Source of the DNA: Octopus sinensis
Lineage: Eukaryota
Direction of reading: 5' to 3'
NCBI RefSeq assembly: GCF_006345805.1
Contig: NW_021824819.1
Location: 1-18,385 of the forward strand
Length of the DNA stretch: 18,385 nt
Below are positions 4,625 through 18,124 of the stretch, in pieces (position 1 is the first letter of the stretch; every line of letters begins with the position of its first letter). Made by a program: the position numbers and the translations under genes. The notes beneath the pieces were generated by a model. It did no database searches. It had not been told where the DNA came from and worked only from the letters and a program-made list of their open reading frames with translations.

Positions 4625-4800
4625 GTATATATGAATGAATATATATGTATATTAGACATATGTATATATTATATATTATATATATATATAATGTAATATT
4701 ACATTATTAATATACTATACTATATTTTATAAGATTATATTGCATATATATCATATATACTATAATATATATATTATATTATATATATATATATATATAA
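4625..4800. repeat. Degenerate (TA)n/AT-rich tract
   Basis: Direct inspection. Confidence 0.85.
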
Positions 4801-5080
4801 TATAATTCGAGACAAAACCACTATTTTAAAACCAAACAAGGAAAGACTTAATCAATACATAAAATTTTAATATAAATTAAATAACCGCCACTACAAATGT
4901 TTCATGTCTGCTACCGACAATCTTCAGGTGGATTTTCGATCTAAAATATCAATATTTTAAAATATAATTTAAAATAATTTAAAATAATAAAATAATAAAA
5001 TTATCATGAAAGAATATAAAGAAATAAAAATATAATCTATATAATCTATATATAATCTATATATATCAATATATAATCTA
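4794..5080 (-). repeat. Left arm of ~290 bp inverted repeat
   Basis: Its reverse complement (tagattatatattgat...gatcgaaaatccacctgaagattgtcggtagcagacatgaaacatttgtagtggcgg...ggttttgtctcgaattatattatata) matches 7714-8003 apart from small, mostly homopolymer indels. Confidence 0.95.
4888..4931 (-). ncRNA. Minimal type I hammerhead ribozyme motif (left copy)
   Basis: Minus strand reads CCAC-CTGAAGA-T-TGTC-ggtagca-GACA-T-GAA-ACA-tt-TGT-A-GTGG: stem I CCAC/GTGG, core CUGAAGA, stem II TGTC/GACA, GAAA, helix III ACA/TGT. Predicted GUA cleavage between 4892 and 4891. Confidence 0.75.
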
Positions 5081-5154
5081 AAATAATCTAAAATAAACCC
5101 TATAAACAATTGAATATAAAACCTATTATAAAAGTTCTCATATTTAAAAATGTA

Positions 5155-5236
5155 CAAAAACCAAAAACAACAAGCAAAAAACAAAAAAACCAAAAACCAA
5201 AAAACAAAAAACAAAAAACAAAAAACAAAAAATAAA
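5155..5236. repeat. (AAAAAC)n microsatellite inside the element
   Basis: aaaaaccaaaaacaacaagcaaaaaacaaaaaaaccaaaaacc... Confidence 0.85.
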
Positions 5237-5545
5237 CTATATATACACACCACACATGCTCATACACTCACCACATTACTTATTCATACTTCCTCACACA
5301 CAAATACACACTCAATTCAAAACAATACATATACCCGCTCACACATACATATACATACACATACATACAGAACACGATATATACCAATATATAAACACCC
5401 ACACCCATACAGATAAATAAATTACGCAAACAATCACACACACAACACCCACACACACACATTCACACATACATAAACACTCAAAAGAAAACCGAACAAT
5501 TCTTTGCACGTGGATATCAAACGTTTAAAAAAATTATGAATGGAA

Positions 5546-6165
5546 ATGAAATCCATACATACAAGTATAAATATAACTATACAACCCCTAACACAATACA
5601 CACAAATACACACACATATATACACACACCACCACAAACATAACCATATACAATACACACTCACACATACTTCATACGTAGATACAAACAAACTTTAATA
5701 AAACGACCATGATAAACGAAAACTCATATATATATTAATATATATATAAATAAAAGAGTGTGTACACGCAGACGGGTGCAATCACACGCACATTCAAAAC
5801 TTACATGTATACAAGTGCATAAATAATCACACCCAATTACATAGCACTCATACACTCCCACATCTACACTTACACTTGTACACACGCACACATACATACA
5901 CACCCATATCTACATACAAAAATTCTTATTAAAATAATCATGATAAATAAAATACATACATACAAGTATAAATATAAAGATACAAGCCCTTACACAATAC
6001 ACACAAATACACACATATATATACACACACCCACAAACATAACCATATACACACTCACACATACAAATACATACGTACAAAACTCGATACAATCAAATAC
6101 GCACACGCACACACATTCACACATACATGAACATACAAAAGAAAACAACATTTCTACACATAATA
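5546..6165 (+). repeat. ~620 bp direct repeat, copy 1 (CA-rich, with a ~400 bp internal period)
   Basis: Colinear with 7055-7675. Shared anchor gagtgtgtacacgcagacgggtgcaatcacacg at 5756, 6517 and 7267. Confidence 0.9.
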
Positions 6166-6479
6166 CGATATATAAAATACTCCATAAGAAATCAGATTAT
6201 CATAAGTAACAAGATTAACAAAGGAGAAAAATAGACATACCTTCTAATCAGTATCAAATTTTGAAGTGAATAACTCTATCCGTTATTACAATAAACAAAA
6301 ATTACGTTACCATGGAACCGAACATATAAAAATTATTAGCGCTACGTAAAACAGCGTCTTTAAAATTATGAATGGAATATAAAATTCTTTGCGCGTAGTA
6401 AACAAACGTAAATTAAAAAATTATGAATGGATATACAAAACTTTCTACAAATTCTTTAAAAAAAACCATAAAAAACGAT

Positions 6480-6850
6480 AACTCATATAGATATTAATAT
6501 ATATATTTAAAAAAATGAGTGTGTACACGCAGACGGGTGCAATCACACGGACATTCAAAATTTGCATGTATACAAGTGCATAAATAATCACACTCAATTA
6601 CATAGCACTCATACTCTACCGCATCTATACTTACACTTGTACACACGCACACATACATACACACCCATACCTACATACAAAATACTTATTAAACTAATCA
6701 TGATAATGAAGTCTATACTTACAAATATAAAGATAAAGATAAAACCCCTTTCATACACAATACACACAAATACACACACATATATACACACACCCACAAA
6801 TATAACCATATACACACTCACACATACATATACATACGTACAAACTCGAT
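6480..6850 (+). repeat. Partial, more diverged third copy of the CA-rich unit
   Basis: Aligns to about 5720-6090 (actcatata...gagtgtgtacacgcagacggg...aaactcgata) with more substitutions. Confidence 0.85.
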
Positions 6851-7054
6851 ATATACACTAATATTCATTCCCACACTCAATAAAATATTAAGTAAATACA
6901 AAACAAAGAAATACCAATTAAATACTAACTATAATTAAAGTCTAAACTATATAACTAAAAATATATATATGGTACTCTAAACTAAAAACAAATTAATCTA
7001 AAGTAACCTTTATTAGGGGGCTATTAATTTTATTAATTTATATATCATTTATGA

Positions 7055-7675
7055 ATGAAATCCATACATACAAGTATAAATATAACTATACAACCCCTAA
7101 CACAATACAAACAAATACACACACATATACACACACCCACAAACATAACCATATACACACTCACACATACATATACATACGTACAAATCTCGATACAAAC
7201 AAACTTTAATAAAACGACCATGATAAACGAAAACTCATATATATATTAATATATATATAAATAAAAGAGTGTGTACACGCAGACGGGTGCAATCACACGC
7301 ACATTCAAAACTTACATGTATACAAGTGCATAAATAATCACACCCAATTACATAGCACTCATACACTCCCACATCTACACTTACACTTGTACCACGCACA
7401 CATACATACACACCCAATCTACATACAAAAATCTTATTAAAATAATCATGATAAATAAAATCCATACATACAAGTATAAATATTAAAGATACAACCCCTT
7501 ACACAATACACACAAATACACACACATATATACACACACCCTCAAACATAACCATATACTCACTCACACATACAAATACATACGTACAAAACTCGATACA
7601 AGCAAATACGCACACGCACACACTTTCACACATACATAAACATACAAAAGAAAAACAACATTTCTACACATAATA
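7055..7675 (+). repeat. ~620 bp direct repeat, copy 2
   Basis: Runs from atgaaatccatacatacaagtataaatataactatacaacccctaac to catttctacacataata, as in 5546-6165. Confidence 0.9.
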
Positions 7676-7713
7676 TTAATGGAATATACAAAACTTTCTA
7701 CAAATTCTTTAAA

Positions 7714-8003
7714 TAGATTATATATTGATTATATATAGATTATATATAGATTATATATAGATTATATTTTTATTTTTTTTATATCTTTCATTGATAATTT
7801 TATTATTTTATTATTTTAATTATTTTAAATTATATTTTAAATATTGATATTTTTAGATCGAAAATTCCACCTGAAGATGTCGGTAGCAGACATGAAACAT
7901 TTGTAGTGGCGGTTTATTTATTTATATTAAAATTTTATGTATTGATTAAGTCTTTCCTTGTTTGGTTTTAAAATAGTGGTTTTGTCTCGAATTATATTAT
8001 ATA
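7714..8003 (+). repeat. Right arm of ~290 bp inverted repeat
   Basis: Reverse complement of 4794-5080. Confidence 0.95.
7867..7909 (+). ncRNA. Minimal type I hammerhead ribozyme motif (right copy)
   Basis: CCAC-CTGAAGA-TGTC-ggtagca-GACA-T-GAA-ACA-tt-TGT-A-GTGG. Predicted GUA cleavage after 7905. One T shorter than the left copy at the base of stem II. Confidence 0.7.
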
Positions 8004-8077
8004 ATATTTTACTATAAAATTGGATTTAACCCTAAATCTGATTTTTCCCTGTAATTTTGGATTCATTCCCTAATATT

Positions 8078-8080
8078 TAT

Positions 8081-8118
<38 letters not shown>

Positions 8119-8146
8119 ATATATATTATATATATATAGATATATA

Positions 8147-8215
<69 letters not shown>
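8078..8215. repeat. (TA)n microsatellite
   Basis: Direct inspection. Confidence 0.95.
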
Positions 8216-8742: not shown

Positions 8743-8762
8743 GATAGATAGATAGATAGATG

Positions 8763-8804
<42 letters not shown>

Positions 8805-8817
8805 AGATAGATAGATA
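8546..8817. repeat. (TA)n followed by a (GATA)n microsatellite
   Basis: Direct inspection. The (GATA)n tract directly abuts the LINE 3' end. Confidence 0.95.
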
Positions 8818-9742
8818 TCTTTATTGGCAACACAGAGCTGAACACAGAGGGGACAAATACAAATGTAGAGAAAAATGGAGGGAAAATAAGAAGAAAATTC
8901 CGATTAAAAGGGATCGGGAAAAACAAGCGATCAAAAGGGATCGTGTACGACAAAAGAATTTTTAAAATGTGAAAAGTAAGATCAGGTTTAACCGTGGAAA
9001 GAAAAGCCTACGGAAAATACCACGGTAACCTCAGGAAGAGAGAGAATATACACATGAGACGAACTTTCTCTCTCTCTCTCTTTTCGATTTAGAGGATCAT
9101 GCTCAAAGTTGTTTGGTCACTCGCACACACTCTCTTTGCTACATTCGCCCACCTTTTTTTGAAACTTTCACGAGACAAATCCTGACTATCCATTCTCATC
9201 TTCCTTTTCAAGTGGTACTCGAAAAAGTTGACGAGCGATTGGCCAGAGACGTAAGCGTTTGTCTCAAATCCTTTCGCTCGAGTCATTCTTTCAACATGGC
9301 CACACATTCTTTCAACATGGCCACCAGCACGATGAAGACTGTCTTGCCTTCCCGGTTGAGGGAAGGTGGCAGCGCAATCCACACGATAGACTCGGCCGAT
9401 AGGCGGACTCGTCCCACATGAGACCACAGCCGTTCGGCATAATCCCACAGATCCAAAATGGTTGGACACTGCACGAGTGCGAGCAGAACGGATTCGTCGC
9501 TCTTACCGCATCTTGGGCAAATCTGTCCGTTGTGTCTCGAACCGTGCCTATAGTGCTTATCCCGAACGGGTAATGCTTCTCGATAGTACTGCCAGTTGTC
9601 CTGGACCGGCGGGTCAGGTGTTCCACGTCGACGCCCAGATTCTGCCCGAGACCGTCGTCGCACCTTCCCTCCACTAATCCTCTGTAGAACGCCTTTGTTG
9701 TAATGAAGTCGCACAAGTTTGGTCCCGGACGGCAGAGTTGCA
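8818..9742 (-). mobile_element. 5'-truncated L1/Tx1-like LINE: disrupted ORF2 C-terminus with CCHC zinc finger (zf-RVT-like) plus 3' UTR
   Basis: Three overlapping minus-strand ORFs join into one frameshifted protein: QLCRPGPNLCDFITTKAFYRGLVEG... / WQYYREALPVRDKHYRHGSRHNGQICPRCGKSDESVLLALVQCP... / TRAKGFETNAYVSGQSLVNFFEYHLKRKMR...KKRWANVAK, stop at 9089-9091. A W...LP...CxxC...E(8)...C pattern is typical of L1/Tx1 ORF2 ends. The pyrimidine-rich 3' UTR ends in AATAAAGA at 8818-8825. Confidence 0.8.
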
Positions 9743-9860
9743 TACACATACATATGTGTATGTATATATGCATATATTTATATATTATTTATATTATATG
9801 ATCGAACGCCAAGCATCCTTTTCCAAGCAAATTTTATCTATACACACACACACACACACA

Positions 9861-10358: not shown

Positions 10359-10772
10359 CTCTTTACTCTTTACTCTTTACTCTTTATTCTTTTACGTGTT
10401 TCAGTCATTTGACTGCGGCCATGCTGGAGCACTGCCTTTAGTCGAGCAACTCGACCCCGGGACTTATTCTTTTTGTAAGCCCAGTACTTATTCTATCGGT
10501 CTCTTTTTGCCGAACCGCTAAGTGACGGGGACGTAAACACACCAGCATCGGTTGTCAAGCAATGCTAGGGGAACAAACACAGACACACAAACACACTCAC
10601 ATACATATATATATATATATATACATATATACGACAGGCTTCTTTCAGTTTCCGTCTACCAAATCCACTCACAAGGCATTGGTCAGCCCGGGGCTATAGC
10701 AGAAGACACTTGCCCAAGATGCCACGCAGTGGGACTGAACCCGGAACCATGAGGTAGGTTAGCAAGCTACTT
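10359..10772 (-). mobile_element. tRNA-derived SINE family A, near full length (slightly 5'-truncated)
   Basis: Minus strand has a B-box-like ggttcagtccc, then ccttgggcaagtgtcttc, an internal (TA/TG) microsatellite, and a 3' end gctccagcatggccgcagtcaaatgactgaaac with a (AAAGAGT)-like tail. Colinear with 16561-16976. Confidence 0.9.
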
Positions 10773-11229: not shown

Positions 11230-11297
<68 letters not shown>

Positions 11298-11321
11298 TTA
11301 TATACATATATATATACATAT

Positions 11322-11357
<36 letters not shown>

Positions 11358-11410
11358 CTATATATATATATATATATAATATATATATACGTATAATATA
11401 ATATATATAT

Positions 11411-11448
<38 letters not shown>
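11150..11448. repeat. Compound (TG)n/(TA)n microsatellite
   Basis: Direct inspection. Confidence 0.95.
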
Positions 11449-11450
<2 letters not shown>

Positions 11451-11945
11451 AGGCGCAATGGACCAGTGGTTAGGGCAGCGGACTCGCGGTCGTAGGATCG
11501 CAGTTTCGATTCTCAGATGGGGTATTGTGAGTGTATATTGAGCGAAAACACCTCAAGATCCACGAGGCTCCGGCAGGGGTTGGTAGTGAACCCTGCTGTA
11601 CCCTTTCACCACAGCCTTTCTCTCATTCTTTATTCCTGTTTCTATTGTACCTGTATTTCAAAGGGCCAGCCTCGTCACACTCTGTGTCACGCTGAATCTC
11701 CCCGATTCACGTGTCTGTGGAGCGCTCTGACACTTGCACGTTAATAAATAAGCTGCGACATCACTGGTGCCAAGCTGTATCAGTCTTTGACTTTCCCTTG
11801 GATAATATCGGTGGCATGGAGAGGGGAAGCTGGTATGCGTGGGGGACTGCTGGTCTTCCATAAATAACTTTGCCCAGACTTGTGCCTCGGAGGATAACAT
11901 TAGGTGCAATCCCATGGTCATTCATGACCGAAGAGGGTCACAACA
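11449..11945 (+). mobile_element. tRNA-derived SINE family B with a long (~200 bp) 3' tail
   Basis: Head ggaggcgcaatggaccagtggttagggcagcggactcgcggtcgtaggatcgcagtttcgattctc has A-box-like (tggaccagtgg) and B-box-like (gtttcgattc) motifs. Body is shared with 13378-13686. Resembles octopus tRNA-derived SINEs, but the exact family name was not verified. Confidence 0.85.
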
Positions 11946-13301: not shown

Positions 13302-13686
13302 GGATGGGAAGCACTCCGTCGGTTACGACGACGAGGGTTCCGGTTGATCCGATCAACGGAACAGCCTGCTCGTGAAATTAACGTGTAAGTGGCTGAGCAC
13401 TCCACAGACACGTGTACCCTTAACGTAGTTCTCGGGGATATTCAGCGTGACACAGAGAGTGACAAGGCCGGCCCTTTGAAATACAGGTACAACAGAAACA
13501 GGAAGTAAGAGTGAGAGAAAGTTGTGGTGAAAGAGTACAGCAGGGATCAGCACCATCCCTGCCGGAGCCTCGTGGAGCTTTAGGTGTTTTCGCTCAATAA
13601 ACACTCACAACGCCCGGTCTGGGAATCGAAACCGCGATCCTATGACCGCGAGTCCGCTGCCCTAACCACTGGGCCATTGCGCCTCC
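13302..13686 (-). mobile_element. Full-length tRNA-derived SINE family B with a short 3' tail and an 11 bp target-site duplication
   Basis: Minus-strand head ggaggcgcaatggcccagtggttagggcagcggactcgcggtcataggatcgcggtttcgattccc. TSD TTAGGAATATT at 13291-13301 and 13687-13697. Confidence 0.92.
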
Positions 13687-14153
13687 TTAGGAATATTACA
13701 CCCTTTACCGTCTTCAGCATTGTACAACTCAAAGTACATAATTATAAACAGTTACACCTACCCATACAAGTATATTGTATTCACGAGCGAATGTACATAC
13801 ATTCACACTTATATAACAAGCTAAGTCTAATTTGTCAACCTCAGCCGCGTGCCAATACAACCAAAATAATCACGGAAGTGGTTTATATTTATCTTTATAA
13901 AGATTTAAACCTTTATTATAAAGATAAATATAAACCCCTTCAACCGATATATTGTTGATTTTATATATCTGACCATTGTCTGACCAGAAATATGCTGTAG
14001 GGCAAGTGGCCGAGGAGGAGGAGGAGGGGGAGGAGAACAGACGTTTGTCTGTACGGGGTGGGGGGGTTCTGTGTGTGTGCGCGCGTGCTTACGTATATGT
14101 ATTGTGCGTATGGTATGGAGTAGCGTTTTTGTGTTTGTCTGTATGTGTGTGAT

Positions 14154-14154
<1 letters not shown>

Positions 14155-14201
<47 letters not shown>
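14155..14201. repeat. (TA)n microsatellite
   Basis: Direct inspection. Confidence 0.95.
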
Positions 14202-14202
<1 letters not shown>

Positions 14203-14591
14203 TAGCAGTATCGACCGGCGTTGCTCGGGTTTGTAAGGGAAATAACTATATAAACATTTTTAGAGAGCTATAGCCCAAAAATAGCAAAAAAATGCATTAA
14301 AAATGGAGAAAAAGTGATGGTAAATTTTTTTTGAAATCGTTGACTCATCGTAGACATTTTTAGAGAGTTACTTCCCTTATATAATAGCGAAAAAATGCAT
14401 TAAAATGGAAAACAAATGATGGTAAATTTTTTTTTAAATCGTAGACTCATCGTAGACGCGCGCTAATACCCAGAAGGGCTCGATATGAATCACGACTATA
14501 AGATACCCGGTTTTGGTTAAACTGCACCGCAAAATGTGGGAGTAGTTAGGAATCTAAATCGTAGGAGACAGACACACACTTTTATATATAA

Positions 14592-14594: not shown

Positions 14595-14634
<40 letters not shown>

Positions 14635-14645
14635 ATATATATATA

Positions 14646-15042
14646 CTAGCAGTATCGACCGCGTTGGCTCGGGTTTGTAAGGGAACTAACTATATAAACA
14701 TTTTTAGAGAGCTATAGCCCAAAAATAGCAAAAAAATGCATTAAAAATGGAGAAAAAGTGATGGTAAATTTTTTTTGAAATCGTTGACTCATCGTAGACA
14801 TTTTTAGAGAGTTACTTCCTTATATAATAGCGAAAAAATGCATTAAAATGGAAAACAAATGATGGTAAATTTTTTTTTAAATCGTAGACTCATCGTAGAC
14901 GCGCGCTAATACCCAGAAGGGCTCGATATGAATCACGACTATAAGATACCCGGTTTTGGTTAAAAAAACTCAGCACCGCAAAATGTGGGAGTAGTTAGGA
15001 ATCTAAATCGTAGGAGACAGACACACACTTTTTATATAAAGA
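14646..15042 (-). mobile_element. Non-autonomous Helitron, copy 2
   Basis: Near-identical to 14202-14594 with the same TC...CTAG termini. Separated from copy 1 by ~51 bp of (TA)n. Confidence 0.8.
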
Positions 15043-16560
15043 TATATATATATATATATATATATATATGGATTTTATATACATTTCTCTGTATATGTGC
15101 ATAAGTGTGTGTAGGAGAGAATGGGGGCTAAATGGAGGGGAAGCAGAAATGTACCGTTATATTGTATTTTGAATGTCTCTGAGTACTCATGTCCGAGACT
15201 ACATCAGTGTCCTAATGTTTGGCAGGTAGAGAGTGCTACGCTTTATGTATCCAGAAGGAAAGTTCAAAACACCTTCGTCGCTTATTTGATAAGCGATTCC
15301 GGAACACCTTTGTCTAGAGCTGAGTAATTTGGTAGAACAATTGAGAGACATGATAAAGTTCCGTAAAGTATTTTGTTTAGACAGTCTCCCTTCTGATTTT
15401 TCAGGTCGCTGTAACCTTTGAGAGATAGCCGAGTAAATAGAAGGAAGAATAATATATGCTAGCGATACACTTATTAGCTTTTGTCATCGGAATCTACACT
15501 CCTCTCAAAAAATGGGCCGCCGTGCTTGGTCAAAGGAAATCAATAATACTAAGTATGCTGCGTTGCTACAGCCACTTAAGATCTCTTTATTCCCCCAGTT
15601 TATGGAGCGAATAAATCTTGGGAGTACACTGCGGTTGATTTAATTGTTTTGGCTTTGCTACATAATCAGTATCATAAAACATATTTATTCCGGACGTAGG
15701 CGTTGTTATTGTTTTGTTAACACCTATATAGTCTATCAACGAATAAGTTATATTATTAGTTACAATGTCCCAGATAGGGTAATTTTATCTATTTCTAGGC
15801 GATGCGTTATTTATCGCACTCAATACACGATGGTAGATAAAACGAATTTCTTTTAAAAATCCTTTATTTACTGAACATTCTACGTTTGTAGGTGTTAACT
15901 TTATTGATTAGAACCAAGTTAACAATGTCCGAACAATTCTGTGGACAAACAAATTCCAGCTACCATCATTTCAGTTTTTCTCTTTCACGTATGTTCGTCC
16001 ACCATTCAAAAAAGATTCATCTAGTTATCTTCAGGATGGAGTTGGCTACCTTGTCCAGTCCCTGAACGCAAGTGTCTTTGATAACGAGGACAGTGAACAC
16101 GGGCATCAGTGAGAAACCTGATGGCGTATTCCTTATTAGCCTCTCTATATTGTTATTGTTCAACTGCGGTATCTCTTGTCGCCCCTTTTCTCTCACAGCT
16201 GTTGTGGTCTGCTGCATACAATTCTCCTCTATTCAATGTCCGGTGCTCTAATTCTTTATGGTTTATATTGAAAACCATCAATGAAATCTTAAAATGGTTT
16301 TGCAAGGATTTCTCTGGTCGTCTAAAGAGCATTTACCGTGCAGAAGTTCGCTACGGAGCGGTAATACTGTGAGCCGGTGATGTGTCAGATTTAGTGCATG
16401 AGAGATTATTTTATCTAATAGGATCTTATTTTTAAGGAAAGCATATAGTGCGATTTGAAGGATAGTTTATCAAGTAAGTACGACCTGGTGATTAGAAATA
16501 CGGTCTTACGAGTTTCAGTAAGCAGGCCGTATATTTTATACATCTGCACAAAACATTGAT

Positions 16561-16976
16561 ACTCTTACTCTTTTTTACTCTTTTACTTGTTTCAGTCATT
16601 TGACTGCGGCCATGCTGGAGCACCGCCTTTAATCGAGCAACTCGACCCCGGGACTTATTCTTTTGTAAGCCCAGTATTTATTCTATCGGTCTCTTTTGCC
16701 GAACCGCTAAGTAACGGGGACGTAAACACACCAGCTTCGGTTGTCAGGAATGCTAGGGGGACAAACACAGACACACAAACACACACATACATATATACAT
16801 TATACATATATACGACGGGCTTCTTTTCAGTTTCCGTCTACCAAATCCACTCAAAGGCTTTGGTCGGCCCGAGGCTATAGTAGAAGACACTTGCCCAAGG
16901 TACCACGCAGTGGGACTGAACCCGGAACCATGTGGTTGGTAAACAAGCTACTTACCACACAGCCACTCCGGCACCT
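16561..16976 (-). mobile_element. Full-length tRNA-derived SINE family A
   Basis: Minus-strand head ggagtggctgtgtggtaag (A box tggctgtgtgg) ... ggttcagtccc (B box), then ccttgggcaagtgtcttc, an internal microsatellite and a 3' (AAAAGAGT)n tail. Confidence 0.92.
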
Positions 16977-17340
16977 ATAATATACTTTTCCATACAGTGT
17001 CTGGGAATTGTCTTCTGACAACGATGTTGTAAGTGTTAAATAGCGGCCAATGAATTCAAGGAGTAATTCCCGCAGCATATGTACTCTTTCTGATATAGGT
17101 ACAGGGAAATATGTAATAGAGGCAATGCGCTTTTGCTGAATTTCAAGCCATTGATTTCGTTAATTCTGATATAACACGTTAAACCTGGTTATAAATAATA
17201 TGCTTTGTTGTCTGCACCTTGATTTACACCGTCCTGCATGCCAAATAATCCAGCAGACACACCACGCCGAACACCACACAGCGCTATTCATCTGCTGTCG
17301 CTAAGATATCACTACACCAACCAGACAGTAGCAGATCATC

Positions 17341-17570
17341 AGCTGGCAGAAACGTTAGCACACCGGGCGAAATGCTTAGCGGTATTGCGTCTGTCGTTGC
17401 GTTCTGAATTCAAATTCCGCCGAGGTCGACTTTGCCTTTCATCCTTTCGGGGTCGATAAATTAAGTACCAGTTACGCACTGGGGTCGATGTAATCGACTT
17501 AATACCTATGTCTGTCCTTGTTTGTTCCCTCTGTGTTTAGCCCCTTGTGGGTAATAAAGAAATAGAAATA
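17341..17570 (+). mobile_element. SINE family C (Meta-domain-like), copy 1
   Basis: tRNA-like head (agctggcagaaacgttag...gttctgaattcaaattcc) followed by gcctttcatcctttcggggtcgataaattaagtaccag, which resembles the MetaSINE central domain from memory. The 3' tail ends aataaagaaatagaaata. Confidence 0.8.
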
Positions 17571-17752
17571 GGTATTGCGTCTGTCGTTGCGTTCTGAATT
17601 CAAATTCCGCCGAGGTCGACTTTGCCTTTCATCCTTTCGGGGTCGATAAATTAAGTACCAGTTACGCACTGGGGTCGATGTAATCGACTTAATCCATTTG
17701 TCTGTCCGTGTTTGTCCCCTCTATGTTTAGCCCCTTGTGGACAATAAAGAAA
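17571..17752 (+). mobile_element. SINE family C, 5'-truncated tandem copy 2
   Basis: 190 bp period relative to copy 1. 17571-17693 is identical to 17381-17503. Confidence 0.85.
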
Positions 17753-18124
17753 CAGTTAAATACTCTGTTAAGTAGAAGCCATTCCTTAAAACTCAAGCCT
17801 GAAGTAATGATATCGCCGATGCATCATATATTTCTTATACTTAGTTGACTTAGCGACGCTAACATCAAGATGGAGATGCAGATGTGTTATTGGTGAGTTA
17901 TTACCAGAACAAGGTGACTCTGGTTGACCCATGAGGATTAAGCAATCCATGTAATAAAAATGCGAAGTTTCTAAACTTCGCTTCTAAATATCCGAGGATG
18001 TGGACTGGTTTCTCACGTCCGCGAAACTTTAAGTAACATGAGGTGCTGAATCAGCCTCTTATGCAATAATTACGTACAACTTCAATTATGTCTTAAGTGT
18101 TGCTTCCGTTATTTTATCTACTTG

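What the first reader, a model, noticed from the sequence alone, without database searches (positions are those of the whole stretch)
4794..8003. 3.2 kb ORF-less element bounded by ~290 bp inverted repeats that each carry a hammerhead ribozyme
Seen: 4794-5080 and 7714-8003 are near-perfect inverted repeats. Each contains CCAC-CUGAAGA-stem II-GAAAC-AUUUGUA-GUGG, pointing outward (left copy on the minus strand, right copy on plus). There is no transposase or RT ORF between them. The ends fade into TA-rich sequence with no clear TSD. Known: Penelope-like retroelements have pLTRs with minimal type I hammerheads and often occur with an inverted pLTR, while animal retrozymes are usually tandem direct hammerhead repeats. 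Inference: a non-autonomous, ribozyme-terminated PLE derivative, possibly an undescribed family. Because of the symmetry, a transcript from either strand would carry a self-cleaving site near its 3' end.
Basis: partly seen in the sequence, partly recalled or inferred. Interest (0 to 1): 0.88.

Follow-up and report, generated by a model that had tools for sequence, protein, structure and literature searches.

The report
Hammerhead-like motif in inverted repeat arms
A 3.2 kb non-coding repeat, probably in an octopod genome, ends in two almost identical inverted 290 bp arms that each carry a hammerhead-ribozyme-like motif. This layout is already described for Penelope-like retroelement insertions, so it is most likely a new member of a known kind, and that remains unproven because no other copy could be found.

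Summary
4794-5080 and 7714-8003 are inverted repeats that differ by 1 substitution and 12 single-base homopolymer indels. Each arm carries, pointing outward, a motif with every invariant hammerhead core base and three helices. Cleavage would fall at 7905|7906 (+) and 4892|4891 (-). The 2.6 kb between the arms has no ORF with a protein domain.

The motif is not canonical. Helix II lacks the G10.1-C11.1 pair, helix III is 2 bp plus a tetraloop, and no Rfam hammerhead model matches it even at E<=10. A U.U-based helix II with a 2-bp helix III does occur in active axolotl hammerheads.

The architecture matches published Penelope-like element (PLE) insertions:
- 3' ends face outward, as with an inverted 5'-truncated copy.
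- (TA)n lies on both sides.
- A one-sided extra tail is present.
- The repeat ends about 100 nt after the cut site.

Base composition ties the body to the left arm. The likely main copy is therefore on the minus strand, with the right arm as the inverted partial copy.

No second copy, autonomous partner or covariation could be obtained, so a long-TIR DNA transposon or an assembly artefact stays open. I rate it a probable new member of a known kind, of moderate interest.

The parts
4794..5080 (-). Left arm. On the best reading it is the 3' terminal module of the main (minus-strand) copy. The outer end abuts (TA)n.
   Evidence: Inverted repeat with 7714-8003. Its + strand composition (A 49 %, G 6 %) continues that of the body.
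4888..4931 (-). Hammerhead-like motif, left copy: CCAC-CUGAAGA-U-UGUC..GACA-U-GAAAC-AUUUGU-A|GUGG. There is a U.U mismatch at the base of helix II. Predicted cleavage is between 4892 and 4891.
   Evidence: Descriptor hits. A hammerhead-compatible fold lies 2.0 kcal/mol above the MFE in a 92-nt context. No Rfam hit.
5030..5090 (.). 11-bp tandem repeats (ATATAATCTAT, about 6 copies) at the inner end of the left arm.
   Evidence: Tandem Repeats Finder.
5081..7713 (-). Non-coding body. The + strand is A 48 %, C 23 %, T 23 %, G 6 %. It contains no hammerhead core.
   Evidence: Composition. No Pfam domains. No CUGANGA...GAAA anywhere in the body. No similarity to the rest of the window.
5150..5236 (.). 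(AAAAAC)n-like simple repeat just inside the left arm.
   Evidence: Tandem Repeats Finder, periods 7 and 29.
5525..7675 (.). Higher-order tandem array inside the body. 5545-6165 and 7054-7675 are 95 % identical (offset about 1510 bp). 6447-6851 is 89 % identical to both. Sub-repeats of about 350-400 bp are present.
   Evidence: the repeat finder families D11-D13. Self-BLAST. Pairwise counts.
7714..8003 (+). Right arm. On the best reading it is an inverted, 5'-truncated copy holding only the 3' terminal module. It cuts a body repeat unit at ...CAAATTCTTTAAA|.
   Evidence: Inverted repeat. 7674-7713 matches the body unit at 6422-6460 at 95 % and the homology stops at the arm. Composition is opposite to the body.
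7713..7767 (.). 11-bp tandem repeats (ATAGATTATAT x5) at the inner end of the right arm.
   Evidence: Tandem Repeats Finder; the repeat finder family D16.
7867..7909 (+). Hammerhead-like motif, right copy: CCAC-CUGAAGA-UGUC..GACA-U-GAAAC-AUUUGU-A|GUGG. Predicted cleavage is between 7905 and 7906. Helix I can extend to 9 bp with one bulged C.
   Evidence: Descriptor hits. Monomer and dimer folds. A hammerhead-compatible fold lies 1.4 kcal/mol above the MFE. No Rfam hit.
8004..8072 (+). Unique 69-bp stretch between the right arm and (TA)n. It is either a PLE-type tail present at one end only, or simply host flank.
   Evidence: No other copy in the window. Its position is read directly from the sequence. 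The tail concept comes from PMC8557442 and PMC11167929.
4639..4804 (.). (TA)n-rich microsatellite abutting the left arm; a candidate target site.
   Evidence: Tandem Repeats Finder.
8073..8200 (.). (TA)n microsatellite on the right side; a candidate other half of the target.
   Evidence: Tandem Repeats Finder: period 2, 66 copies.

Best explanation
This is a young, non-autonomous retroposon insertion of the Penelope-like (PLE) type in a (TA)n microsatellite of what is probably an octopod genome.

Structure. The main copy lies on the minus strand. It is a U/G-rich non-coding body (7713 down to 5081, built of tandem units) followed by a roughly 290-nt 3' module (5080 down to 4794). The right arm (7714-8003, + strand) is an inverted copy of that 3' module alone.

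How the two arms arose (inferred). One integration event made both arms. A PLE RT/GIY-YIG protein supplied in trans cut both strands of the AT-rich target. It primed cDNA synthesis from each DNA end on the same kind of template RNA. This leaves two 3' ends facing outward, one of them perhaps with an extra tail.

The ribozyme-like motif. The 3' module carries a minimal type-I hammerhead-like motif about 100 nt from its end. In a master copy arranged in tandem, this motif would trim longer-than-unit transcripts. It would work weakly as a monomer and better as a dimer through its 2-bp, near-palindromic helix III.

In this particular locus the ribozyme is probably idle. There is no second sense copy in cis. 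A read-through transcript would instead form a 290-bp arm-arm duplex.

Shown: the repeat geometry, the motif, the composition and the lack of coding capacity. Inferred: retroposition, PLE dependence and cleavage.
For: (1) The arms are effectively identical: 1 substitution in about 290 bp. The 12 differences are homopolymer indels. This fits one recent event that copied one template twice. The other inverted pair in the window has 29 substitutions.

(2) Each arm holds all invariant hammerhead core bases (C3 U4 G5 A6 N7 G8 A9, G12 A13 A14, A15.1-U16.1, H17=A) and helices I, II and III, oriented outward. Chance expectation is 0.004 per window, or 6e-5 per arm.

(3) The left-arm version has a U.U at the base of helix II and a 2-bp helix III with a tetraloop. 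That layout is described for axolotl HHR_Amex2, which self-cleaves (22 % in 1 h as a monomer, efficiently as a dimer; PMC7229834).

(4) Published PLE hallmarks match. An inverted 5'-truncated copy forming inverted repeats, (TA)n target bias and a one-sided tail are described in PMC8557442. Min-hammerheads on opposite strands and a helix I of 4-5 bp are described in PMC4209133. The Anolis PLE protein nicks and extends both strands at AT-rich DNA and starts reverse transcription about 85-92 nt downstream of the hammerhead cut site (PMC11167929). Here the repeat ends 97-112 nt after the cut site.

(5) The left arm and the body share a strongly skewed strand composition (G 6 % on the + strand), and the right arm has the opposite skew. 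This fits one minus-strand unit plus an inverted partial copy.

(6) The body holds no ORF or protein domain.

(7) The closest named relatives of the neighbouring LINE fragment are from Argonauta hians, an octopod.
Against: - No Rfam hammerhead model matches, even at E<=10.
- The G10.1-C11.1 pair, highly conserved in PLE hammerheads (PMC4209133), is absent. The right copy has an unpaired U before G12.
- Loop 3 (AUUU) is only near-palindromic.
- The hammerhead fold is not the minimum-energy fold in context.
- The arm has no direct repeat, so there is no pseudo-LTR.
- No RT/GIY-YIG remnant lies anywhere in the window.
- No second copy was found in any collection, so there is no covariation or family evidence at all.
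- (TA)n covers 7 % of the window and also flanks an unrelated SINE, so the target argument is weak.
- The 69-bp 'tail' is longer than the published 30-40 bp and may be host DNA.
- The chance estimate uses thresholds fitted after the fact. Genome-wide, several hundred chance motifs of this quality are expected.
Confidence: 0.5

Rival explanations
1. It is a non-autonomous DNA transposon of a foldback or long-TIR kind. The 290-bp arms are terminal inverted repeats bound by a transposase, the body is captured or expanded satellite, and the hammerhead-like motif is a chance match with no function.
For: Long, nearly identical terminal inverted repeats with tandem subrepeats at their inner ends (11-bp units) are typical of foldback-like elements (own knowledge). 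The interior is tandem-repeat and ORF-less. The TA-rich flanks are compatible with a TA target site. No Rfam hammerhead hit. Helix II is non-canonical.
Against: A motif of this quality is expected by chance 6e-5 times per arm. The termini show no recognisable superfamily signature or unambiguous target-site duplication. The strong strand asymmetry shared by the body and one arm is not expected for a symmetric DNA element. The distance from cut site to repeat end resembles that of a characterised PLE.
Confidence: 0.22
2. These are two independent insertions, in opposite orientation, of a short (about 300 nt) hammerhead-bearing retroposon (a solo 3' module or SINE-like unit) into TA-rich DNA on either side of a pre-existing local satellite array. 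On this reading the 3.2 kb 'element' is not a unit.
For: Both arms end at nearly the same inner position, as expected if about 290 nt is the full length of the unit. The body is a tandem array that the right arm cuts at an arbitrary point of its repeat unit. Most PLE hammerheads occur as single dispersed motifs (PMC4209133).
Against: Only 1 substitution separates the arms. The body and left arm share the same extreme composition. Neither inner junction has (TA)n. The body has no other copy in the window.
Confidence: 0.13
3. It is an assembly artefact or a local inverted segmental duplication. The second arm would have been created by mis-joining of noisy long reads, or by a replication-based fold-back event, and not by transposition.
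For: The arms differ almost only by homopolymer indels (12 against 1 substitution). That is the signature of unpolished long-read sequence in a repeat. PLE-type inverted structures are known to cause assembly problems (PMC8557442).
Against: A 2.6 kb asymmetric spacer separates the arms, whereas fold-back chimeras have little or no spacer (own knowledge). The arm boundaries are sharp and coincide with the (TA)n flanks. An artefact would not explain the hammerhead-like motif in the arm.
Confidence: 0.1

Closest known systems
Penelope-like elements: pseudo-LTRs with minimal type-I hammerheads, and insertions with an inverted 5'-truncated copy (Cervera & De la Pena 2014, PMC4209133; Craig et al. 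2021, PMC8557442; Frangieh et al. 2024, PMC11167929)
   Same: The hammerhead-like motif sits about 100 nt from the element's 3' end. Helix I is short (4 bp core) and helix III very short. Hammerheads occur on opposite strands. The inverted arms have 3' ends facing outward. The target is AT/(TA)n-rich. There may be a one-sided tail.
   Different: There is no RT/GIY-YIG ORF and no direct pseudo-LTR. Helix II is 4 bp rather than 6-8 bp and lacks G10.1-C11.1. The extra nucleotide is on the 3' side of helix II in the right copy. The candidate tail is 55-69 bp rather than 30-40 bp.
Metazoan non-LTR retrozymes (Cervera & De la Pena 2020, PMC7229834; Li, Clavereau & Pollet 2026, bioRxiv 10.64898/2026.07.22.740005)
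   Same: They are non-coding, AT-rich and carry a type-I hammerhead. [quoted passage not shown]
   Different: Retrozymes are head-to-tail tandems of 150-450 bp units, each with a hammerhead, and yield small circular RNAs. Here the two motifs are inverted and 2.9 kb apart, and the internal tandem units carry no hammerhead core.
Axolotl HHR_Amex2 hammerhead (PMC7229834)
   Same: It has a U.U mismatch at the base of helix II and a 2-bp helix III capped by a tetraloop, as in the left-arm copy. It has weak monomer activity and efficient dimer activity.
   Different: Amex2 keeps loop 1-loop 2 tertiary contacts and sits in 350-bp tandem repeats. No such contacts are evident here.
Non-autonomous Chlamys PLE derivatives such as MRC1 of Chlamydomonas (PMC8557442)
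   Same: They are ORF-less elements that share only the 3' end with an autonomous PLE and are mobilised in trans.
   Different: Those form pseudo-LTRs and head-to-tail multimers, and mostly lack hammerheads. They occur in green algae, not animals.
Foldback-type and long-TIR non-autonomous DNA transposons (own knowledge)
   Same: They have long, near-identical inverted termini with internal subrepeats and a non-coding, repeat-rich interior.
   Different: No transposase-family terminal signature or clear target-site duplication is seen here. The composition is strand-asymmetric. A ribozyme-like motif sits in the arms.

Membership tests
Hammerhead ribozyme, type I | Invariant core: C3 U4 G5 A6 N7 G8 A9, G12 A13 A14, A15.1-U16.1, H17 not G | tested here: met
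   CUGAAGA ... GAAAC ... GUA| is present in both arms.
Hammerhead ribozyme, type I | Three helices around the core, with helix I open | tested here: met
   Helix I is CCAC/GUGG, extendable to 9 bp with a bulge. Helix II is UGUC/GACA. Helix III is AC/GU with loop AUUU.
Hammerhead ribozyme, type I | G10.1-C11.1 pair closing helix II directly on the core | tested here: not met
   The right copy has U10.1-A11.1 plus an unpaired U before G12. The left copy has a U.U mismatch at that position.
Hammerhead ribozyme, type I | Match to a curated covariance model (Rfam Hammerhead_1, _3, HH9, HH10, _II) | tested here: not met
   No hammerhead family is listed at E<=1 on the whole window or at E<=10 on 141-nt and 81-nt stretches.
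Hammerhead ribozyme, type I | Compensatory changes in the helices across copies | not testable with these tools
   Only the two arms are available, and they are copies of each other. No other copy was found.
Hammerhead ribozyme, type I | Site-specific self-cleavage | not testable with these tools
   This needs a transcription or cleavage assay.
PLE minimal hammerhead (Cervera & De la Pena 2014) | [quoted passage not shown] | tested here: inconclusive
   It is present in the left copy (A9-U-UGUC) and absent in the right copy. The difference is a one-base T-run indel that may be a sequencing error.
PLE minimal hammerhead (Cervera & De la Pena 2014) | Palindromic 15.2-16.2 and loop 3, allowing a dimeric helix III | tested here: inconclusive
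   ACAUUUGU self-pairs as 6 bp with two central U.U mismatches. Cofolding gives a dimer at -18.5 kcal/mol against 2 x -6.1 kcal/mol.
PLE minimal hammerhead (Cervera & De la Pena 2014) | Short helix I (4-5 bp) and long helix II (6-8 bp) | tested here: inconclusive
   The helix I core of 4 bp fits. Helix II is only 4 bp (5 if A9 pairs).
Penelope-like element (autonomous) | ORF with reverse transcriptase and GIY-YIG endonuclease | tested here: not met
   No such ORF or Pfam domain lies in 4794-8003. The only RT-related fragment in the window is a LINE-type zf-RVT at 9286-9777.
Penelope-like element (insertion architecture) | Pseudo-LTR, meaning a direct repeat from a partial tandem | tested here: not met
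   The arm has no direct copy anywhere in the window.
Penelope-like element (insertion architecture) | Inverted 5'-truncated copy adjacent to the 5' end, giving flanking inverted repeats with 3' ends outward | tested here: met
   The arms are inverted with the ribozyme-sense 3' ends outward. Composition ties the body to the left arm only.
Penelope-like element (insertion architecture) | AT-rich or (TA)n target, with an optional one-sided tail | tested here: inconclusive
   (TA)n lies at 4639-4804 and 8073-8200, with 69 bp of unique sequence on the right only. However, (TA)n makes up 7 % of the window.
Non-autonomous PLE derivative | 3' end shared with an autonomous PLE of the same genome | not testable with these tools
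   The source genome is in none of the collections that could be searched by DNA pattern, and all DNA and protein searches returned nothing.
Metazoan non-LTR retrozyme | Head-to-tail tandem units of 150-450 bp, each with a type-I hammerhead | tested here: not met
   The motifs are inverted and 2.9 kb apart. The body repeats carry no hammerhead core.
DNA transposon with terminal inverted repeats | Terminal inverted repeats plus a target-site duplication of fixed length | tested here: inconclusive
   The inverted repeats are present. The flanks TATATAATATA and TATATTATATA are near-palindromic, so a duplication cannot be told from an extension of the repeat.

The most novel reading that the evidence does not exclude
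This could be a recently active, cephalopod-specific family of ORF-less elements whose only conserved part is a roughly 290-nt 3' module. That module would carry a non-canonical hammerhead with a U.U or U-A base to helix II. It would be mobilised by a PLE enzyme that primes on both DNA ends, and it would carry satellite DNA as cargo. Such a family would sit between PLE pseudo-LTRs and retrozymes. It would also place long dsRNA-forming inverted repeats in a genome known for heavy RNA editing.
Probability: 0.25. Interest if true: 0.5.

Novelty: new member of a known kind. Interest (0 to 1): 0.35.

Why it matters
If confirmed, the locus would be a clean, young example of the two-ended priming inferred for Penelope-like elements. 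It would also show that a short hammerhead-bearing 3' module is enough for mobilisation of unrelated non-coding DNA in a cephalopod. This bears on the current proposal that animal retrozymes derive from PLE termini. It would add a hammerhead variant without the G10.1-C11.1 pair to the natural repertoire. As it stands it is one locus without family evidence, and the architecture and the ribozyme association are already described in other animals.

Tried and rejected
- **Rfam.** I scanned the whole window and each arm separately at permissive thresholds. There was no hammerhead hit. The many sub-threshold miRNA hits lie in (TA)n, (CA)n and (TG)n tracts.
- **Exact-pattern scans for arm sequences.** I scanned JGI metagenome contigs twice, IMG/VR viral contigs once and GTDB genome contigs once. 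All returned 0 hits.
- **Protein-level route to other copies.** The query translations were the arm/body junction (4972-5259, -), a body unit (6511-6858, +) and the LINE fragment. No hits came back.
- **Exact-product look-ups.** Three window ORFs were looked up and none is on record.
- **Retrozyme reading.** I rejected it because the internal tandem units have no hammerhead core.
- **SINE reading.** I considered that the left arm is a + strand SINE with the (AAAAAC)n tract as its tail. I rejected it because the right arm has no matching tract on its inner side.
- **Real divergence between the arms.** I considered that the arm differences reflect age. I rejected it because 12 of 13 differences are homopolymer indels.
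- **Papers not available.** Lunse et al. 2017 on dimeric PLE hammerheads is not held. The supplements of Cervera 2014 are not held either.
Full report

Yes. The repeat finder reports the two blocks 4794-4946/7851-8003 and 4956-5066/7731-7841 as inverted repeats. A gapped alignment of the whole arms (4794-5080 reverse-complemented against 7714-8003) gives 281 identical positions in 295 columns.

The differences are unusual. There is one substitution (5021/7777) and 12 one-base gap events, every one in a homopolymer run. The other inverted pair in the window (11439-11705/13432-13696) differs by 29 substitutions and 2 gaps.

An indel-to-substitution ratio of 12:1 is not what divergence normally produces. 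I read it as uncorrected long-read homopolymer error in a repeat that is hard to polish (inference). The arms are therefore effectively identical, and the inverted structure is young.

**2. The hammerhead-like motif**

- **Location.** A descriptor scan of both strands finds exactly two hits, one per arm: 7867-7909 (+) and 4931-4888 (-). No other CUGANGA...GAAA pair lies within 4700-8100.
- **Sequence.** The right copy reads CCAC / CUGAAGA / UGUC-GGUAGCA-GACA / U / GAA / AC-AUUU-GU / A| / GUGG.
- **Core.** All invariant core positions are present.
- **Helix I.** It is 4 bp and can continue, after a bulged C, for five more pairs in the right copy.
- **Helix III.** It is 2 bp with a tetraloop.
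- **Helix II.** This is the weak point. The pair next to the core is U-A with an unpaired U before G12 in the right copy. In the left copy, which has one more U, it is a U.U mismatch.
- **Indels in the motif.** Two of the 12 homopolymer indels fall inside the motif (AAUUCCAC vs AAUCCAC; GAUGUC vs GAUUGUC). The true sequence at these points is uncertain.
- **Rfam.** No hammerhead family matches: not at E<=1 on the window, nor at E<=10 on 141 nt and 81 nt around each copy.
- **Folding.**
  - In a context of about 91 nt, a hammerhead-compatible fold lies 1.4 kcal/mol (right) and 2.0 kcal/mol (left) above the minimum-energy fold.
  - Two copies cofold into a dimer with an extended helix III at -18.5 kcal/mol, against 2 x -6.1 kcal/mol for monomers.

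**3. More than chance?**

| Descriptor | Expected per window (both strands) | Expected per 290-nt arm |
|---|---|---|
| Lenient (dinucleotide shuffles) | 0.11 | not computed |
| Matched to the observed quality | 0.004 | 6e-5 |

The two arms are one independent event. The strict thresholds were set after seeing the motif.

At 1e-7 per base and strand, a genome of a few gigabases would hold several hundred chance motifs. The motif alone therefore proves little. Its position inside a young terminal repeat, pointing outward, is what is unlikely by chance.

**4. What lies between and around the arms?**

- **Coding capacity.** The 2.6 kb body has only short low-complexity ORFs. None has a Pfam match near threshold.
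- **Repeat structure.**
  - The body is a higher-order tandem array. 5545-6165 and 7054-7675 are 95 % identical, and 6447-6851 is 89 % identical to both.
  - A unique A-rich part with an (AAAAAC)n-like tract precedes the array.
  - The body has no match elsewhere in the window.
- **Composition.** It is strongly strand-skewed. This continuity ties the body to the left arm:

| Part (+ strand) | A | C | T | G |
|---|---|---|---|---|
| Body | 48 % | 23 % | 23 % | 6 % |
| Left arm | 49 % | 12 % | 33 % | 6 % |
| Right arm | 32 % | 6 % | 51 % | 12 % |

- **Right junction.** The right arm cuts a body repeat unit at an arbitrary point. 7674-7713 matches 6422-6460, and the homology then stops.
- **Flanks.** The left arm abuts a (TA)n tract (4639-4804). 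The right arm is followed by 69 bp of unique sequence and then (TA)n (8073-8200).
- **Target-site duplication.** The last 11 bases of the repeat (TATATAATATA) are near-palindromic, so a duplication cannot be read.

**5. Most likely mechanism**

The published picture of Penelope-like elements fits on several counts:
- Their insertions often carry an inverted 5'-truncated copy next to the 5' end, which creates flanking inverted repeats. They prefer microsatellites such as (TA)n. They often show an extra tail at one end only (PMC8557442).
- Their terminal repeats carry minimal type-I hammerheads with a helix I of 4-5 bp and a tiny helix III. Pairs of such motifs on opposite strands were noted (PMC4209133).
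- A purified Anolis PLE protein nicks and extends both strands of an AT-rich target. It starts reverse transcription about 85-92 nt downstream of the hammerhead cut site, and the tail lies between two start sites (PMC11167929).

Here the repeat ends 97-112 nt after the predicted cut site.

I therefore read the locus as one minus-strand, ORF-less unit (body plus 3' module) together with an inverted copy of the 3' module alone. Both would have been made in one event by a PLE enzyme acting in trans.

The ribozyme-like motif would serve in tandem master copies to trim transcripts, mainly as a dimer. A hammerhead with a U.U at the base of helix II and a 2-bp helix III is known to cleave in the axolotl (PMC7229834).

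At this locus the motif is probably idle. No second sense copy is present. A transcript spanning both arms would pair them at about -361 kcal/mol.

All of this mechanism is inferred. Only the geometry, motif, composition and lack of coding capacity are shown.

**6. Rivals**

- **Long-TIR or foldback-type DNA transposon with a fortuitous motif.** It cannot be excluded. The arms have inner tandem subrepeats, the flanks are TA-rich, Rfam is silent and there is no family evidence.
- **Two independent insertions of a 300-nt hammerhead-bearing unit around a local satellite.** The shared inner boundary is the argument for this reading. The composition shared by the body and left arm and the single substitution between the arms argue against it.
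- **Assembly artefact or local inverted duplication.** The error-like indels suggest it. The 2.6 kb asymmetric spacer and the sharp boundaries argue against it.

**7. Comparison and membership**

- The element works like a non-autonomous PLE derivative. It is not an autonomous PLE, having no RT/GIY-YIG ORF and no pseudo-LTR.
- It is not a retrozyme in the defined sense, because there are no tandem hammerhead units.
- The motif meets the core and helix definition of a type-I hammerhead. It fails the G10.1-C11.1 criterion and the Rfam models.
- Covariation and cleavage could not be tested.

**8. Host and limits**

- **Host.**
  - The window is AT-rich and 7 % (TA)n.
  - It carries tRNA-like SINE copies and a LINE 3' fragment with zf-RVT.
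  - The closest named relatives of that LINE fragment come from the octopod Argonauta hians at 53 % identity.
  - One SINE also looks to me like the abundant octopus SINE, from memory only.
- **Limits.**
  - The source genome, or any close relative of it, is in none of the collections that could be searched by DNA pattern.
  - All pattern scans, protein searches and exact look-ups for further copies returned nothing.
  - The key test is whether the arm, the junction and the architecture recur, and whether an autonomous partner exists. That test remains to be done.

**9. Verdict**

The most likely reading is a new member of a known kind: a PLE-type non-autonomous insertion with a hammerhead-like 3' module. 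My confidence in that reading is about 0.5, and the interest is moderate.

Noticed in passing
window 4794-5080 vs 7714-8003: The arms differ by 12 one-base homopolymer indels and only 1 substitution. This looks like unpolished long-read error, so homopolymer lengths in this region, including two inside the ribozyme-like motif, should not be trusted.
   Followed up: partly
window 11439-11705 (+) and 13432-13696 (-): A second inverted pair lies about 1.7 kb apart and is 88 % identical (29 substitutions, 2 gaps). Each arm begins with a tRNA-like head (GGAGGCGCAATGGACCAGTGGTTAGGGC...). They are probably two SINE copies in opposite orientation. The left one abuts a long (TA)n tract (11231-11448). 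Neither holds a hammerhead motif, and ARAGORN calls no tRNA.
   Followed up: partly
window 10537-10750 and 16560-16980: Two copies of another SINE-like repeat carry an internal CA/TA microsatellite (...GCTAGGGG.ACAAACACAGACACACAAACAC...TTCAGTTTCCGTCTACCAAATCCACTCA...). From memory it resembles the abundant octopus SINE. I did not verify this with a tool.
   Followed up: no
window 9286-9777 (-): A 5'-truncated LINE 3' fragment has a weak zf-RVT match (E 0.0028). Its best representative hit is 61 % identical and comes from a metagenome. The closest named relatives are hypothetical proteins of Argonauta hians (53 %).
   Followed up: partly
window 14180-14375 / 14624-14819 and 17381-17565 / 17571-17755: There are two local direct duplications. 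One is 97 % identical at a 444-bp offset, and the other is a 95 % identical adjacent tandem of about 190 bp. Their nature is unknown.
   Followed up: no
whole window: There are 78 sub-threshold Rfam matches (mir-297, mir-3149, mir-466 and others). None reaches its family's gathering score. Those whose alignments were shown lie in TA/TG/CA-type simple repeats, and the rest carry names of the same AT/GT-rich miRNA families. They look like low-complexity artefacts.
   Followed up: yes
window 8761-8831: A (GATA)n microsatellite adjoins further (TA)n tracts. Perfect (TA)n runs cover about 7 % of the window, so adjacency of any element to (TA)n is weak evidence of target preference.
   Followed up: partly
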